A DNA stretch of 64,000 nucleotides, taken from positions 186,001 to 250,000 of the IMG/VR virus record IMGVR_UViG_3300027749_002876; one strand, given 5' to 3'. Positions 25,669 through 44,692 of this stretch are shown piece after piece; the first letter of the stretch is position 1; each line of letters starts with the position of its first letter. The translations under genes were made by a program, and so were the position numbers. The notes beneath the pieces are model-generated. The model did no database searches and was not told the DNA's origin. It saw only the letters and a list, made by a program, of their open reading frames with translations.

Positions 25669-25704
25669 TTTTTAATCTCCTGTATACTTATTTATCTTTA
25701 ACAT

Positions 25705-29304: not shown

Positions 29305-29432
29305 TTTATTTTTCCTTTATGTAAAATTATGAGGTTTACTACCTTTTTGCATACTATTATTTATCTAATATCTTTAAAAAAACATAACTACTATGCTGTT
29401 TTGTGCCTTCGAAGGTTCCTGATAAATATATC

Positions 29433-40249: not shown

Positions 40250-40260
40250 GTCTCTTTTTT
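40234..40260. terminator. bidirectional intrinsic terminator
   Basis: A7-GAGAC-CTAA-GTCTC-T6 between convergent genes. Confidence 0.8.
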
Positions 40261-40571
40261 TATTTTAGCAATTTTGCTATCGTATCGAATCCCAGTGATC
40301 CTATTACAACACCAGCACCCATCATCATCCAGCGCCATTTTTCAAGTGCAGAAACTTTGTCAGACATAGACTTATGGGCGTTAGCACTAGCTTCTTTCAT
40401 TTCTTTTAGAAGCTGGTGTGTATCTTCGTTATTCTTCGCCATACAAACATTAACATCTTTGATATCAGCTTTGATTTCACTGATATCATTTGTGATGTTT
40501 TGTACTTGTACTTGAAGAACTGCGATTTCCGTTTCAGTCTTTGGCATTTTAATAGTTCTACCAGTTACCAT
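40260..40571 (-). CDS. coiled-coil protein with C-terminal transmembrane helix (XhlA/holin-like)
   Basis: heptad region followed by WRWMMMGAGVVIGSLGF. Confidence 0.6.
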   Translation of the reverse strand: MVTGRTIKMPKTETEIAVLQVQVQNITNDISEIKADIKDVNVCMAKNNEDTHQLLKEMKEASANAHKSMSDKVSALEKWRWMMMGAGVVIGSLGFDTIAKLLK

Positions 40572-40573
40572 GA

Positions 40574-41962
40574 TTAAGCACTAGCAATAACTACGATTGG
40601 GTTAGGCTGACCTTCATATGTATTAGCGGCGTATGCTGTATTGAATGTAGCGATAACATCAGGATTAACACTATTAACAACAGCAGTACCTGTACCAGTA
40701 CCTGTAGCTGTAGCAATAAATGTAACACCTGTCATATTACTTGCTGAACCACATAATGTCCAATTTGTCGTACCAGTACTATAAATTGTATACACTGTAC
40801 CTACACTTAATGAACCGGCTGCAACTTGCGTTGGGAACACTTCAGTGTTGTAATCATTAACACTTGAAACATATGCTGTAGCAGAGGCTGCATCAGTAGA
40901 CAATATATTCATTGTATTTGGTGTCAATGCTGTGTTAGCAACATTGGCTGTATAGCATTGTGCAATTAAACCAGTTGTACCACCTTGTACTAGATACTTT
41001 GTCTTACCTTTTTGACGTAAGATGAAACCAGCTTCGTCATTTGCATATACAAAAGATGTGCCTGCATAATTTGCAGTAGAATTTGCAGCCAACACAGTAA
41101 CGTCAATAGTAGCATTTGCCGCTGTTGTGCCGGTAGTAACTGCTTTCTGTGGACCATATTGTGAGGTTGAAACAGTAAATGCAGATGCGTTAGCAATAGC
41201 ATCAACAAAGTATGTTGAACCTGCAATTAATCCGCCGGTAGTTGTATCAAACACAACTGGTGCACCCACAAACAATGTTTGTGCGTTTCCTGAAGTGCGA
41301 ATAACGTTACCTGTAGCATTTGTGTTAGCAACAGCAACAGTAATATAACCTGTATTTGTATCAACAAAACCAACATTAATTGGTGTTGTCTGACCTGGAA
41401 TACCAGTTGGTTGAAGAATTTGAACTGCTGATCCAACTGATAATGTATTTGCAAAATCAGTGCCGGCACCGTAGACATTCAAATTAGCTGTGTCACCATA
41501 GATGATACCTGTACCAGAGATACCAATAGCTACTTGTGGTAGAACTTGTGATCCAACGATAGCTGTGTTACCACCAACTACACCATATGTGTTAGCGTTG
41601 TTTGACGGAAAGCCTGCACCACCTTCTGGGTTGTTGAAATATGCATCAACAACTTCAAATGATGCTTTAACAGTGCCACCAGTTGAATTAGACAATGAAG
41701 CCATTACACGTGGTTGAACACTTAGTTGTGTCGTTGAAACACTGAATGTAGTGTTTGATAGTATAGTATCAACATAATATAATGTGTTGGTTACTAAACC
41801 ACTAATGGCACCTGCGACTACAAATGACATACCAGATGCTATGCCAACAGTTGGACTAGTTGTTAGATTTCCACCTGAGATTGTAACGATACTGCCTGTT
41901 GTTGCTGTATCAGTGATTGTTAAGACTGCTTGAGCCTTTGCGATTTTTAGAGGACGTCCCAT
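40574..41962 (-). CDS. virion structural protein (MGRPLK...)
   Basis: T/A/G/N-rich; two GL....YYV..I....F.VST modules; ILRQKGKTKYLV; AAGGA SD. Confidence 0.7.
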   Translation of the reverse strand: MGRPLKIAKAQAVLTITDTATTGSIVTISGGNLTTSPTVGIASGMSFVVAGAISGLVTNTLYYVDTILSNTTFSVSTTQLSVQPRVMASLSNSTGGTVKASFEVVDAYFNNPEGGAGFPSNNANTYGVVGGNTAIVGSQVLPQVAIGISGTGIIYGDTANLNVYGAGTDFANTLSVGSAVQILQPTGIPGQTTPINVGFVDTNTGYITVAVANTNATGNVIRTSGNAQTLFVGAPVVFDTTTGGLIAGSTYFVDAIANASAFTVSTSQYGPQKAVTTGTTAANATIDVTVLAANSTANYAGTSFVYANDEAGFILRQKGKTKYLVQGGTTGLIAQCYTANVANTALTPNTMNILSTDAASATAYVSSVNDYNTEVFPTQVAAGSLSVGTVYTIYSTGTTNWTLCGSASNMTGVTFIATATGTGTGTAVVNSVNPDVIATFNTAYAANTYEGQPNPIVVIASA

Positions 41963-41983
41963 TTGTTTTTCCTTTGATAAAAT

Positions 41984-42039
41984 TAGCGGGTTCTAGCCGC
42001 TACGCAGTGGGTAACTGCATAAACTCTCAGAATGAGAGT
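41984..42039 (-). ncRNA. candidate structured 5' leader RNA with three abutting hairpins
   Basis: ACUCUCA-UUC-UGAGAGU; UAUGCAGU-UACCC-ACUGCGUA (one U.G pair); UAGCGG-CUAGAAC-CCGCUA; lies between the late promoter at 42048-42055 and the SD. Confidence 0.6.
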
Positions 42040-42069
42040 GTATGATGTATTTATCAAATAAGGGTAAAA

Positions 42070-42621
42070 TTAACCAGTAAAGCTACCAGTTGGGCTGGTG
42101 TAACCACTTGTTCCTGTATTAGGATGAGGTGCGCCCAATTCAGTTATAGTAAACAATGTATTAGCTCCCGCTGTGGTTAGATAAGAAACAATGTTTCCTT
42201 GTCCAACTATGATACTGTTATTAACTGTGTTAGGAGGAATCAACTCACTATTTGCAGTAGCTATCGTATAAGGAACTCCGTAAGGATTGTATCTTGCAGT
42301 TGTGTTAGCAATGGCAACTGCGGAATTTGCAGTCAATGTTAAACTTGTGTTATTTGCAATGGCTGCTACAATACCTACATTTGCGCCTGTTGTATTACCA
42401 ATCCAACTACCAACAGCTAATTCAGTACTGAATGATGTACCTGCTCCGGTAACTGTTGCACTATTAGTTGCACAAGTTACATTTCCAGTCAATGCAACGT
42501 TTGGGAAGCTTGTGGTAAACTGAATACCTACATTAGATGTAGCTATTCTAATTTTATCTGTCGCAATATTTGCGGAAGCTGCCGCTGTTGCGCTGTTTGC
42601 TGTATATGCGTATGATGCCAT
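42070..42621 (-). CDS. virion structural protein
   Basis: 183 aa, A/T/N-rich; VTGAGTSF.TEL.VG module; AATAAATA upstream. Confidence 0.65.
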   Translation of the reverse strand: MASYAYTANSATAAASANIATDKIRIATSNVGIQFTTSFPNVALTGNVTCATNSATVTGAGTSFSTELAVGSWIGNTTGANVGIVAAIANNTSLTLTANSAVAIANTTARYNPYGVPYTIATANSELIPPNTVNNSIIVGQGNIVSYLTTAGANTLFTITELGAPHPNTGTSGYTSPTGSFTG

Positions 42622-42647
42622 TTTAAATTCCTATATCTTATTTATTC

Positions 42648-44657
42648 TTATAGTCTGCCTACGGCGACCTCTATTATACCTTCACCGTCAAAGTTTTCTA
42701 ATGCTTTGCCGATAACTGTTCCCATTTGTGGTGATGCACTATGTTTAGCATAACCATCACCAGCTGACACTAACATGTCACCTTTACTTATTGTTCCACG
42801 AACTTTAGTTGGCACACGACCTTGTAATGCAAGTGCTACAATATGTTCACCTTTGCATTTCATATTCATTACATATGCTGGATCAGTAGAAACAACACCG
42901 GCTACTTTGTTAGTTCCATCTTCAGCTAATGTTACTTCTTTATCACCACCAAATGCTAGTACTGTGCCAGGTTTATATTTTTTATCTGCTTCGTAATATT
43001 CTGCTAAGTCAGCATATGTTGCACTAAGTCTTGATCCTGCACTCAAACTGAAGTTACCAGTTATAGTACCTACTGTAGTATTTGCTCCGGTTGTTAAGAC
43101 TGTAGTAATAATATTACCTGCAGTTATGTTACCTGTTGTAGATATAGTATTACTTCCATATGAGTTCAATAATGTAACAACATTACTATCACCGTATGTT
43201 CCATTACCTCCACCTGTAGCGGCTGCAAATACACCATTACCATATAATACATTACTAGAATTACCATCTTTATTAATAGTAGCAATATTTCCTATACCAC
43301 TAACATTTGCTACAGCTACACTGTTGGCTATATTAGCGTAAGCTACTGTACCTGATACATTGGCACCCGGAATAGAAGTTAATCCAGTTGCGGCTCCATA
43401 ATATGTGCCTGTTATATTTGCACCAGTAATGTTTCCACTTGATGACAATGATGTAAGAGTACCTACACTTGTAATATTAGGTTGAGCATTGGTTGTAACA
43501 GTACCTGCAGTTGACGAATTACCTGTTACATTGCCTGTAATATTAGCAACAAGGTCTCCGGAAATAGAAACACTTGTTGTATTGGCACTAATTGTTTGTG
43601 TGCCTATATAGATAGTACTATTAGCCAAATACAAATCATTAAATCTATTTGTATTATTACCTAAATTATATGTTATGTTTGCATTAGGTATAATATTACC
43701 TGCAACAACAAGACCAGATAGTGTACCTACGCTTGTAATATTTGGTTGTGATCCGGTTGTTAATGATCCGGCAATGGTAGTTGCACTGAAATTACCTGTC
43801 AATGTTACAATATTTCCATTTGTGATTGTAAAGTTAGCAGAACCATTTAAAATACCATTATTATTATATTGTAGTGTATTAGCAGAACCACCTGGATTGG
43901 CTACTCCACTACCAGTAATAGAAGTTGCAATAGCGTTTGGACTGTTAGTGTAACTTAAGCCAGTACCAACTGAATTTGCTGTTAAATCTATATCAGTGAA
44001 TAATGAAACGTTACCTGATGTTGGATAATCATTTGCCAACTTGGTATAAAAAGTACGACTGTTAACAATAGCATTAGCGTTACTATTGGCACCTGAGTTA
44101 GACCCAGATACGCCTGAAATAGTAATTTTTGTACTATTTGTGTATGGTGTGGTGTTTGCAACGGTCATCACAATTGGAGTAGCATTTGATAGTGCTACAA
44201 TATTTGTGTACAGAGTACCTTTAGTTGTCCAATTTAAATTACCTTGACCATCAGTTTCTAATATATATCCAGTTGCACCACCACCAATTTTAACATTAGA
44301 AATAGTGCCTAAATGTATGGGTATACCTTCATATTCAGCAGTGTTGTCAGGGCTCTCGGCATTTCCACCAGTATTAATCCACGAATTAGTATTGATATCA
44401 TATGCTAATATTTGACCGGGCAGTACATTAGTAATGTTAACATTACTACCATTACTACCTTCAACTTGACTAAAACTAATAGTTGAATAAGAAGTAAGTA
44501 CTTCAACATTTTCAACATTGGTTACTGCTACGTTGCTAGCACCTATAAACAATTGTTTAGCATCATTAGCCCAACCGAATTGAGCCTCATCAAGCTGTGG
44601 CAGGTCTACAAGATTGCCTGAACGTTGTTGTATCTTCGAGATTTGGATGATTGCCAT
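42648..44657 (-). CDS. tail fibre/spike protein with C-terminal intramolecular-chaperone-like domain
   Basis: N-terminal ISKIQQRSG..LPQL...FGWA.D..LFIG; QPNITSVGTL repeats; C-terminal ADLAEYY...GRVPTKV.G...KGD.LV...VIGKALE. Confidence 0.78.
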   Translation of the reverse strand: MAIIQISKIQQRSGNLVDLPQLDEAQFGWANDAKQLFIGASNVAVTNVENVEVLTSYSTISFSQVEGSNGSNVNITNVLPGQILAYDINTNSWINTGGNAESPDNTAEYEGIPIHLGTISNVKIGGGATGYILETDGQGNLNWTTKGTLYTNIVALSNATPIVMTVANTTPYTNSTKITISGVSGSNSGANSNANAIVNSRTFYTKLANDYPTSGNVSLFTDIDLTANSVGTGLSYTNSPNAIATSITGSGVANPGGSANTLQYNNNGILNGSANFTITNGNIVTLTGNFSATTIAGSLTTGSQPNITSVGTLSGLVVAGNIIPNANITYNLGNNTNRFNDLYLANSTIYIGTQTISANTTSVSISGDLVANITGNVTGNSSTAGTVTTNAQPNITSVGTLTSLSSSGNITGANITGTYYGAATGLTSIPGANVSGTVAYANIANSVAVANVSGIGNIATINKDGNSSNVLYGNGVFAAATGGGNGTYGDSNVVTLLNSYGSNTISTTGNITAGNIITTVLTTGANTTVGTITGNFSLSAGSRLSATYADLAEYYEADKKYKPGTVLAFGGDKEVTLAEDGTNKVAGVVSTDPAYVMNMKCKGEHIVALALQGRVPTKVRGTISKGDMLVSAGDGYAKHSASPQMGTVIGKALENFDGEGIIEVAVGRL

Positions 44658-44692
44658 AAGTGTGATTCTTTACAGATTTACACTTATTTATC
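44656..44692 (-). promoter_or_regulatory. late promoter (44685-44692) overlapping an 8-bp hairpin that covers the start codon
   Basis: ATAAGTGT (44656-44663) / ACACTTAT (44680-44687). Confidence 0.65.

What the first reader, a model, noticed from the sequence alone, without database searches (positions are those of the whole stretch)
41963..42055. Three-hairpin structured leader on a virion gene
This unusually long late leader (about 80 nt) is GC-rich and almost fully paired: three abutting stems of 7, 8 and 6 bp with loops UUC, UACCC and CUAGAAC, ending about 10 nt before the SD. A U.G pair works only on the coding strand. There is no U-tract, so it is not a terminator. I cannot assign it to a known RNA family. 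Inference: a protein-binding operator, processing signal or small RNA.
Basis: partly seen in the sequence, partly recalled or inferred. Interest (0 to 1): 0.62.

Follow-up and report, generated by a model that had tools for sequence, protein, structure and literature searches.

The report
Freshwater-2 RNA: phage late-gene leader
The three hairpins are real and conserved, but they are a copy of an already catalogued orphan RNA motif (Rfam freshwater-2), which here turns out to be the 5' leader of a late virion-protein mRNA in a giant T4-like lake phage.

Summary
On the minus strand, window 42039-41986 folds into three abutting hairpins (z = -5.2 against shuffles).

- The window belongs to a roughly 525-kb T4-like jumbo phage.
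- The motif lies between a T4-type late promoter box (GATAAATA, 42055-42048) and the SD/ATG of a 462-aa protein.
- That protein belongs to a family that almost always starts MGRP. A homolog in Pseudomonas phage PA5oct is a mass-spectrometry-confirmed virion protein.
- There is one copy per genome in the five large phage genomes searched, and essentially none in cellular genomes.
- All three stems covary. Five H2 base pairs (including a U.G wobble), the H2 loop CCCA and the H3 loop UAGAAC are conserved in sequence.
- Cultured relatives keep the promoter and the MGRP start but lack the leader.

Best reading: a gene-specific post-transcriptional control element that probably binds a factor. The function is untested. 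Interest is moderate.

The parts
42048..42055 (-). T4-type late promoter box GATAAATA. The predicted transcription start is about 42042, the 6th nt after the box (inferred from the T4 rule).
   Evidence: TAAATA is invariant upstream of H1 in 64/64 diverse instances and present in 192/194 unique leaders. In the window, 24/26 gene-strand boxes are intergenic, 16-27 nt before starts. A T4 gp55 homolog is in the full 524-kb genome.
42023..42039 (-). Hairpin H1 (ACUCUCA / UUC / UGAGAGU). Its sequence varies between homologs but pairing is kept.
   Evidence: In one search, 5 of 6 pairs show compensatory changes and 98.9% of cells are paired. The H1 segment folds better than shuffles in 181/192 leaders.
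42001..42021 (-). Hairpin H2 (UAUGCAG / UUACCCA / CUGCGUA) with the invariant U42019.G42003 wobble. The loop ends in CCCA.
   Evidence: 5 of 7 pairs are invariant and one pair switches GC/AU/UA. The loop ends CCC[AG] in 145/189 leaders. In one small clade H2 is replaced by an unrelated hairpin.
41986..42000 (-). Hairpin H3 (GCGG / CUAGAAC / CCGC). The loop NUAGAAC is nearly invariant and the stem covaries freely.
   Evidence: all 4 pairs show compensatory changes. Loop counts are CUAGAAC 134, AUAGAAC 34, UUAGAAC 13, GUAGAAC 6.
41975..41985 (-). A/U-rich single-stranded linker (UAAUUUUAUCA). With H3 it scores as a weak terminator-like site in this clade only.
   Evidence: Linker length varies from 1 to 18 nt across the family and its sequence is not conserved.
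41960..41974 (-). Shine-Dalgarno AAGGA (41974-41970), an A-rich spacer and the ATG (41962-41960). These are the last 15 positions of the Rfam model.
   Evidence: Rfam alignment, model positions 1-84 = window 42039-41960.
40574..41962 (-). Downstream gene: 462-aa protein of the 'MGRP' family, probably a virion structural protein.
   Evidence: No Pfam or PHROG match. Residues 309-371 match the profile of short family members (hhalign 93%, E 3e-7). PA5oct EST35_0383, annotated 'structural protein, ESI-MS/MS', matches the same profile (97.6%, E 5e-12).
40260..40571 (-). 103-aa ORF starting 2 nt after the MGRP gene. It has only weak family matches, among them faint holin and hemolysin PHROG hits. 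It is probably co-transcribed behind the leader (inferred).

Best explanation
Shown:
- The element is a copy of the Rfam family freshwater-2 (RF02980).
- It lies in a roughly 525-kb T4-like jumbo phage from lake water.
- It is the structured 5' leader between a T4-type late promoter box and the ribosome-binding site of one gene, which encodes a virion-type protein of the 'MGRP' family.

Inferred mechanism:
- Late transcription starts about 6 nt after the GATAAATA box, so the mRNA begins 2-3 nt before H1.
- H1 caps the 5' end.
- H2 and H3 abut with no spacer. They are conserved in sequence and not only in pairing: the U.G wobble, the CCCA loop and the UAGAAC loop.
- Together H2 and H3 would form a recognition platform for a trans-acting macromolecule, either a phage or host protein or the ribosome.
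- That partner would set translation and/or stability of this single late mRNA.

The identity and the cis-leader role are well supported. The factor-binding step is the most likely but untested part, at roughly 0.4 on its own.
For: Identity:
- Rfam match of 70.3 bits against GA 49.9, full model, E 1e-8.

Structure:
- z = -5.2.
- Covariation on 55 protein-ascertained homologs: 96% of cells paired against 78.6% shuffled, score 0.389 against 0.080, 0/500 shuffles as high.
- All three helices are supported in the window's clade, with H1 showing 5/6 compensatory pairs.

Promoter:
- The TAAATA box is present in 192/194 leaders.
- Boxes in the window show strong positional bias.
- A gp55 homolog is in the full genome.
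- 66/184 leaders have a terminator-like hairpin just upstream of the box, which makes the gene its own late transcription unit.

Gene specificity:
- 116/121 pattern hits are followed by a protein starting MGRP, and 4 more by near variants.
- By my reading of the listed upstream sequences, all 77 protein-ascertained loci with enough upstream DNA carry the leader directly or on the upstream tandem paralog.
- There is exactly one copy in each of five phage genomes of 180-525 kb.

Sequence constraint beyond pairing:
- H2 has 5/7 invariant pairs including U.G, while H1 and H3 stems drift freely.

Phage-only distribution:
- Of 33 pattern hits in 185,579 species genomes, 32 are unstructured chance hits.
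- The one real hit is on a contig of a MAG that carries T4-type gp23 genes, one of them on the contig with the motif.
Against: - No transcript 5' end was measured. The only RNA data are metatranscriptome contigs, which cannot show starts, and two of them bridge the promoter box.
- No binding partner was identified. A T4 RegA homolog was not found.
- The predicted SD and AUG are only moderately open, with median unpaired probabilities of 0.59 and 0.45. No conserved alternative pairing suggests a switch.
- Homologous genes in cultured phages (PA5oct, Atu_ph07, Phosso) keep the late box and the MGRP start but have short leaders without the motif. The element is therefore dispensable for the gene as such.
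- One clade replaced H2 with an unrelated hairpin.
Confidence: 0.72

Rival explanations
1. Passive leader. The hairpins act without any specific partner, as a 5'-terminal stabiliser against 5'-end-dependent RNases and as an insulator that keeps the strong A-rich RBS unpaired. This would boost output of a protein needed in many copies.
For: - H1 begins 2-3 nt after the predicted start in the window's clade.
- The SD and spacer are strong and conserved.
- In T4-like genomes the gene sits right after the major capsid gene gp23, which fits a high-copy head protein.
- 5'-end dependence of RNase E and its role in T4 mRNA decay are established (PMC3014915).
Against: - A passive stabiliser does not need an invariant stem sequence, a fixed U.G wobble or fixed loops across proteins that are only 20-30% identical.
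- It would be expected on other abundant late genes too, yet there is one copy per genome.
- In another clade up to about 7 unpaired nt precede H1.
Confidence: 0.25
2. Autogenous operator. Unassembled MGRP protein binds H2/H3 of its own leader and represses translation, like T4 gp32 or ribosomal-protein feedback.
For: - The RNA is almost exclusively linked to this one protein family and is single-copy.
- The protein core is predicted as small SH3/Tudor-like beta-barrels with basic motifs, folds that often bind nucleic acids.
- In tandem paralog pairs one leader serves both genes.
Against: - The fold matches are weak (Z <= 5.3, Foldseek E > 0.1).
- Leaderless homologs keep the same conserved protein motifs, so no residue set tracks the RNA.
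- No binding test is possible with these tools.
Confidence: 0.15
3. Small-molecule riboswitch controlling translation of the late gene.
For: - Highly conserved nucleotides in loops and one stem.
- A 5' UTR location directly before an RBS.
- A subgroup carries an anti-SD-like CU[UAC]CU in the linker.
Against: - Three independent hairpins without a multi-helix junction or internal-loop pocket.
- The linker to the SD varies from 1 to 18 nt and usually has no expression platform.
- There is no metabolic gene association.
Confidence: 0.04
4. Terminator, attenuator or RNase processing site for read-through transcripts from the upstream fibre-like genes.
For: - In this window H3 plus AUUUUAU is flagged as terminator-like.
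- The linker is A/U-rich and single-stranded.
- RNA contigs bridge the promoter box.
Against: - The U run and the A/U linker are not conserved outside the window's clade.
- The scan expects 1.7 such sites by chance in this region.
- Stems of 7 bp or less are too short for RNase III.
- Where real terminators occur they lie upstream of the promoter box, not in the motif.
Confidence: 0.05
5. Independent small RNA, or a DNA-level signal such as a hairpin in single-stranded DNA or a protein site on duplex DNA.
For: - Metatranscriptome contigs pile up on the leader (bin 41964-42047 is highest in run X3).
Against: - The pile-up is expected because the leader is shared by many related phages.
- The Rfam model and every homolog continue into the SD and ATG.
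- The invariant U.G wobble and other G.U pairs work only on the mRNA strand.
Confidence: 0.03

Closest known systems
Rfam RF02980, freshwater-2 RNA motif (from Weinberg et al. 2017, NAR 45:10811, PMC5737381)
   Same: Everything that defines the family: three hairpins, the conserved UUAUGC...GCGUA stem, the UAGAAC loop, and the SD and ATG inside the model. It also has a freshwater metagenomic source and a downstream gene without a known domain. The match is full length and above the gathering score.
   Different: Nothing structural. The paper's main text does not discuss the motif, and I could not read its supplement. From my memory of the public description, no classified organism and no gene function were assigned.
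T4 translational operators in 5' leaders (gene 32 pseudoknot with gp32 autoregulation; gp43 and RegA operators)
   Same: T4-like phage, a gene-specific structured 5' UTR, and one site per genome. Autogenous control of gene 32 translation is described in PMC3014915.
   Different: Those are early or middle replication genes whose products are known nucleic-acid binders. Here the gene is late and virion-type, there is no pseudoknot, no binder is known, and no RegA homolog was detected.
5'-terminal stabiliser hairpins of highly expressed mRNAs (E. coli ompA leader, T7 gene 10 leader; recalled from general knowledge)
   Same: A hairpin within a few nt of the predicted 5' end of an mRNA with a strong RBS.
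   Different: Such stabilisers need only pairing. Freshwater-2 also has sequence-invariant stem and loop positions and is restricted to one gene per genome.
RNA-phage coat protein operator hairpins (MS2, Qbeta, PP7; recalled)
   Same: A short hairpin with sequence-specific loop positions next to an RBS, linked to a virion protein.
   Different: There the coat protein represses the replicase gene in an RNA genome. Here the context is a dsDNA phage mRNA, and binding by the virion protein is only a hypothesis.
HK022 put RNA (promoter-proximal stem-loops that modify RNA polymerase; recalled)
   Same: Tandem stem-loops at the very start of a phage transcript.
   Different: put promotes read-through of terminators in long operons. 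Here the unit is short (the gene plus one 103-aa ORF) and the element abuts the RBS.

Membership tests
Rfam RF02980 freshwater-2 | Covariance-model score at or above the curated gathering score, over the whole model | tested here: met
   70.3 bits against 49.9, model positions 1-84 of 84, E 1.1e-8 for the window. The same hit appears in the full record.
Rfam RF02980 freshwater-2 | Three consecutive hairpins supported by covariation | tested here: met
   H1 has 5/6 and H3 4/4 pairs with compensatory changes. H2 has 1-2 covarying pairs and the rest are invariant. 96-99% of cells are paired.
Rfam RF02980 freshwater-2 | Conserved primary sequence UUAUGC / GCGUA and loop UAGAAC | tested here: met
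   Present in the window and kept in protein-ascertained homologs.
Rfam RF02980 freshwater-2 | Position immediately upstream of a protein-coding gene (cis-regulatory type), with SD and ATG in the model | tested here: met
   Model positions 70-84 align to AAGGA...ATG of the ORF at 40574-41962.
Rfam RF02980 freshwater-2 | Freshwater or aquatic metagenomic provenance | tested here: met
   The record is a JGI metagenome contig. Runs that hold near-identical words are labelled lake water or freshwater. Habitat labels of the IMG/VR contigs themselves were not available.
T4-type late promoter | TATAAATA-like -10 box without a -35, upstream of late (virion) genes, in a phage encoding a gp55-type sigma factor | tested here: met
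   GATAAATA at 42055-42048. There are 24/26 gene-strand boxes in intergenic DNA before structural genes. A gp55 homolog is in the 524-kb genome at E 4e-5. The transcription start itself was not measured.
Intrinsic terminator | G+C-rich hairpin followed directly by a U tract, conserved at that position | tested here: not met
   H3 plus AUUUUAU is flagged in this window, but 1.7 such sites are expected by chance, and the U run is absent from most family members.
tRNA / tRNA-like element | Cloverleaf recognised by a tRNA finder | tested here: not met
   ARAGORN finds none in the window. The closing stem of the apparent four-way fold is not conserved.
Riboswitch | Conserved ligand pocket (junction or internal loop) coupled to an alternative-pairing expression platform | tested here: inconclusive
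   There is no junction. The linker varies from 1 to 18 nt. An anti-SD-like element is present only in a 45-sequence subgroup. Ligand binding is not testable here.
Autoregulatory protein operator | Specific binding of the encoded (or another) protein to the leader | not testable with these tools
   Only indirect evidence: single copy, gene-specific, sequence-constrained loops.

The most novel reading that the evidence does not exclude
Freshwater-2 is an operator through which a high-copy virion protein of T4-like lake phages controls its own translation (or is controlled by a dedicated phage factor). That would be a dsDNA-phage counterpart of coat-protein/operator or ribosomal-protein feedback, added to a gene that cultured relatives express without it.
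Probability: 0.2. Interest if true: 0.6.

Novelty: already known. Interest (0 to 1): 0.36.

Why it matters
As a structure, the element is already in Rfam, so it is not a discovery. Its value is context. As far as I could find, freshwater-2 is an orphan motif with no organism, no gene function and no mechanism attached.

It sits directly behind a late promoter and in front of one specific virion-protein family. Cultured relatives (PA5oct, Atu_ph07, Phosso) carry the gene without the leader.

That turns an untestable metagenomic motif into concrete experiments: leader-reporter fusions, binding tests with the MGRP protein, and comparison of leader-bearing and leaderless homologs. It would also be one of the few structured regulatory leaders known on a late structural gene of a tailed phage.

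Tried and rejected
- Literature. A full-text search for 'freshwater-2' returned only unrelated water-chemistry papers. The source paper's main text does not discuss the motif and its supplements are not held.
- tRNA-like cloverleaf. ARAGORN found none. The outer stem pairs the promoter box with the linker and is no better than shuffles across 177 leaders, at -1.21 against -1.12 kcal/mol. Rejected.
- uORF from the AUG inside H2. The H2 loop length varies from 5 to 10 nt, so the downstream UAG is not kept in frame, and no SD precedes it (read). Rejected.
- Pairing of the H2 loop CCCA with the start region AUGGG. It is possible in most members, but AUGGG is fixed by the Met-Gly codons, so it cannot covary. 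44/189 loops lack CCC[AG]. Left open as a lead only.
- T4 RegA as the trans factor. UUAUG resembles its recalled target. No homolog was found in five motif-bearing genomes or in three leaderless phages, using a single-sequence search of low sensitivity.
- Family assignment of the downstream protein. Pfam and PHROGs gave nothing for the window protein, and short members gave only one marginal PHROG hit (E 0.008). tblastn of the 462-aa protein against cultured phages gave no match. PDB fold searches gave only weak Tudor/SH3-like similarity. The Atlas feature search's top matches were viral hypothetical proteins; two low-ranked rows (score 0.88) carried Pfam names.
- The search for related loci with the 44-member alignment failed for lack of a conserved stretch. 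It was replaced by a 13-member alignment.
- Metatranscriptomes. Only assembled contigs were available, so no 5' ends, strand or expression level could be read. Two contigs from different studies break at about 42022, the H1/H2 boundary. I attribute this to assembly branching where the variable H1 meets the conserved H2, not to a real RNA end.
- Pattern scan of cellular genomes. 32 of 33 hits lacked pairing, promoter box and MGRP start. This serves as a negative control for the pattern.

Full report
**The observation**

The genes around the finding are on the minus strand. The flagged stretch is the 107-nt gap between a 183-aa ORF (42070-42621) and a 462-aa ORF beginning MGRPLK (40574-41962). 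Folded as RNA, the minus strand gives three adjacent hairpins. The MFE is -28.3 kcal/mol against -13.0 +/- 2.9 for dinucleotide shuffles (z = -5.2, none of 200 as good). The plus strand folds less well, z = -3.8.

| Element | Coordinates (minus strand) |
|---|---|
| H1 | 42039-42023 |
| H2 | 42021-42001, with a U42019.G42003 wobble |
| H3 | 42000-41986 |
| A/U linker | 41985-41975 |
| SD AAGGA | 41974-41970 |
| ATG | 41962-41960 |

- H2 at 8 bp and H3 at 6 bp compete for the same UA.
- The region is 41% G+C.
- A short U run follows H3, and the simple scan calls it terminator-like.

**What it is**

Infernal against Rfam finds one family above threshold in the whole 64-kb window. It is RF02980, freshwater-2 RNA, at 42039-41960 on the minus strand. 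The score is 70.3 bits against a gathering score of 49.9, covering model positions 1-84 of 84.

The motif comes from Weinberg et al. 2017 (PMC5737381). Its main text does not discuss this motif and the supplement is not held. From memory, the public description says it occurs only in aquatic metagenomes, upstream of genes without known domains.

**Whose genome**

- The window is part of a 91-kb IMG/VR virus record.
- The same gene at 100% identity lies on a 524,565-bp contig rated 100% complete.
- The window encodes a T4-type tail sheath and tube, gp13 and gp15 neck proteins, a Lon-like protease, and a DnaB helicase and primase.
- The full genome has a T4-type gp23 capsid gene and a gp55 late sigma homolog.
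- The sheath is closest to the jumbo phages Phosso, Atu_ph07 and PA5oct, at about 46% identity.

**Promoter context**

Aligning 64 diverse instances shows an invariant TAAATA box upstream of H1. 192 of 194 unique leaders have it.

In the window, 26 of 30 ATAAATA sites are on the gene strand. Of those, 24 are intergenic although 87% of that strand is coding. They usually lie 16-27 nt before a start codon. This is the signature of T4-type late promoters; the TATAAATA -10 box is established knowledge.

The box here (42054-42048) is 85 nt from the ATG, so the leader is exceptional in this genome. By the T4 rule the transcript would start near 42042, 2-3 nt before H1 (inferred). In 66 of 184 homologs a terminator-like hairpin with a T run lies just upstream of the box, which makes the gene its own late unit.

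**Conservation and covariation**

Essentially all are true instances with paired H2 and H3, an SD and an ATG.

To avoid circularity I also collected loci through the downstream protein:
- Among relatives of the window's protein, 33 of 38 unique upstream regions have the strict motif.
- Five have H2 replaced by an unrelated hairpin but keep H1 and H3.
- One lacks the promoter and H1.
- Among short family members, by my reading of the listed sequences, all 77 loci with enough upstream DNA have the leader directly or on an upstream tandem paralog.

On 55 protein-ascertained sequences, 96% of cells pair against 78.6% in shuffles. The covariation score is 0.389 against 0.080, with 0 of 500 shuffles as high, and slid controls collapse. 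In the window's clade H1 has 5 of 6 pairs with compensatory changes.

H1 and H3 stems drift freely. H2 keeps 5 of 7 pairs invariant, including the U.G wobble. The H2 loop ends in CCC[AG] in 145 of 189 leaders. The H3 loop is NUAGAAC in 187 of 192 leaders. The outer stem that RNAfold adds in the window is not conserved.

**The gene behind it**

- 116 of 121 instances are followed by a protein starting MGRP. The arginine codon switches between CGN and AGA, so this is protein-level conservation.
- Lengths run from 116 to 468 aa, around a shared core (I[VI]xQ[KR]Gxx[KR][FY]).
- No Pfam or PHROG family fits.
- A model of a 128-aa member (pLDDT 81.5) is all-beta. It gives only weak Tudor/SH3-like matches.
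- BFVD and tblastn link it to uncharacterised proteins of Atu_ph07, Phosso and PA5oct. The PA5oct homolog is annotated as a structural protein found by ESI-MS/MS.
- Profile comparisons tie both that protein and residues 309-371 of the window's protein to the family.
- In five T4-like contigs the gene follows the portal, protease, scaffold and gp23 head module. In the jumbo phage it sits about 128 kb from gp23, next to fibre-like genes.
- The three cultured homologs keep the TAAATA box and the MGRP start but have short leaders and no motif. The leader is therefore an add-on, and the MGRP start does not depend on it.

**Distribution**

There is exactly one copy in each of five phage genomes of 180-525 kb. 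In one genome per 185,579 prokaryotic species, the pattern gave 33 hits. Of these, 32 have no pairing, no box and no MGRP start. The one real hit is in a Haliscomenobacter MAG. Two of that MAG's contigs encode gp23, one of them the contig with the motif, so it is probably a binned phage.

Lake metatranscriptomes from four studies contain pieces of the gene and leader. They are available only as assembled contigs, so no starts or expression levels can be read.

**How it most likely works**

Shown:
- A conserved, strand-specific three-hairpin RNA.
- It is placed between a late promoter box and a strong RBS.
- It is single-copy and tied to one virion-protein family.

Inferred:
- H1 caps the 5' end.
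- H2 and H3 abut and are constrained in sequence. They would serve as a recognition surface for a protein or the ribosome that tunes translation or stability of this mRNA.

A purely passive stabiliser does not explain the sequence constraint or the one-gene rule. A riboswitch lacks a pocket and a general expression platform; the linker varies from 1 to 18 nt, and only a 45-member subgroup has an anti-SD-like element. A terminator is not a family feature. No partner was identified, and a RegA homolog was not found.

**Verdict**

The feature is real, but it is an already catalogued RNA family. The added value is context that makes its function testable. Interest is moderate.

Noticed in passing
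whole window; L123 (IMGVR_UViG_3300027749_002876, 524,565 bp): The window belongs to a T4-like jumbo phage of about 525 kb (CheckV 100% for the long contig). It has T4-type gp23, gp13, gp15 and gp55 homologs. Its sheath is about 46% identical to those of Sinorhizobium phage Phosso, Agrobacterium phage Atu_ph07 and Pseudomonas phage PA5oct.
   Followed up: partly
window, minus strand, e.g. 44685-44691, 42639-42645, 29358-29364, 25689-25695: ATAAATA late-promoter boxes precede nearly every structural gene. 24 of 26 on the gene strand are intergenic, mostly 16-27 nt before the ATG.
   Followed up: yes
L142, L144, L163, L169, L199 (upstream of the MGRP gene): In one small clade of close relatives H2 is replaced by a hairpin of unrelated sequence (stem GUAAUGA, loop UAAC). 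H1 and the H3 loop UAGAAC are kept. This looks like a natural swap experiment on H2.
   Followed up: partly
L280:952-1860, L293:951-1860, L285:978-1875: Some phages carry two tandem MGRP paralogs. The first has the leader. In L280 and L293 it ends in an acidic tail (DDDDF[TD][ED]DA), and the second gene follows within about 10 nt with no leader of its own. In L285 the second gene has a late box with a short leader.
   Followed up: partly
45 unique leaders, e.g. L010, L019, L036, L073 (between H3 and the SD): A subgroup has a conserved extra element AU[CAU]GGAC[U][UAC]CU in the linker. Its CU[UAC]CU can pair with the SD, at -3.13 against -1.65 kcal/mol for shuffles. In some members UUCUA could instead pair with the H3 loop UAGAA, which suggests a possible switch in that subgroup only.
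   Followed up: partly
e.g. L002, L018, L055, L215 (between the TAAATA box and H1): One clade has a conserved UGUCAGAUAG stretch starting at the predicted +1, before H1. Its role is unexplained.
   Followed up: no
L323 (NZ_JBBAKG010000003.1, Haliscomenobacter sp. MAG, 148-kb contig) and a second contig of the same MAG: The only real motif hit in cellular genome collections is on a MAG contig. Two contigs of that MAG encode T4-type gp23, one of them the contig with the motif. This is either mis-binned phage DNA or a hint that Haliscomenobacter is a host.
   Followed up: partly
L208 (Atu_ph07 333384-341680): The leaderless MGRP homolog of Atu_ph07 (470 aa) sits inside a dense array of 14 tRNA genes, with a homing endonuclease next to it.
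   Followed up: no
L203:9400-10000, L295:9716-9919, L296:9580-9813, L297:3823-4325: In T4-like contigs, a 350-650-nt interval lies between gp23 and the MGRP gene. It holds small ORFs of 43-128 aa, one with a NifU_N domain, ahead of the leader.
   Followed up: no
window 42648-44657 (-) and 42070-42621 (-): The two genes upstream of the leader look like fibre proteins. They hit tail-fibre PHROGs, and the 669-aa one has a weak C-terminal Peptidase_G2 / intramolecular-chaperone-type match.
   Followed up: no
window 41964-42047, run X3: Summed contig depth in a lake metatranscriptome is highest on the leader bin. This most likely arises because many related phages share the conserved H2-H3 core. 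Contigs from two studies break at the H1/H2 boundary for the same reason.
   Followed up: partly
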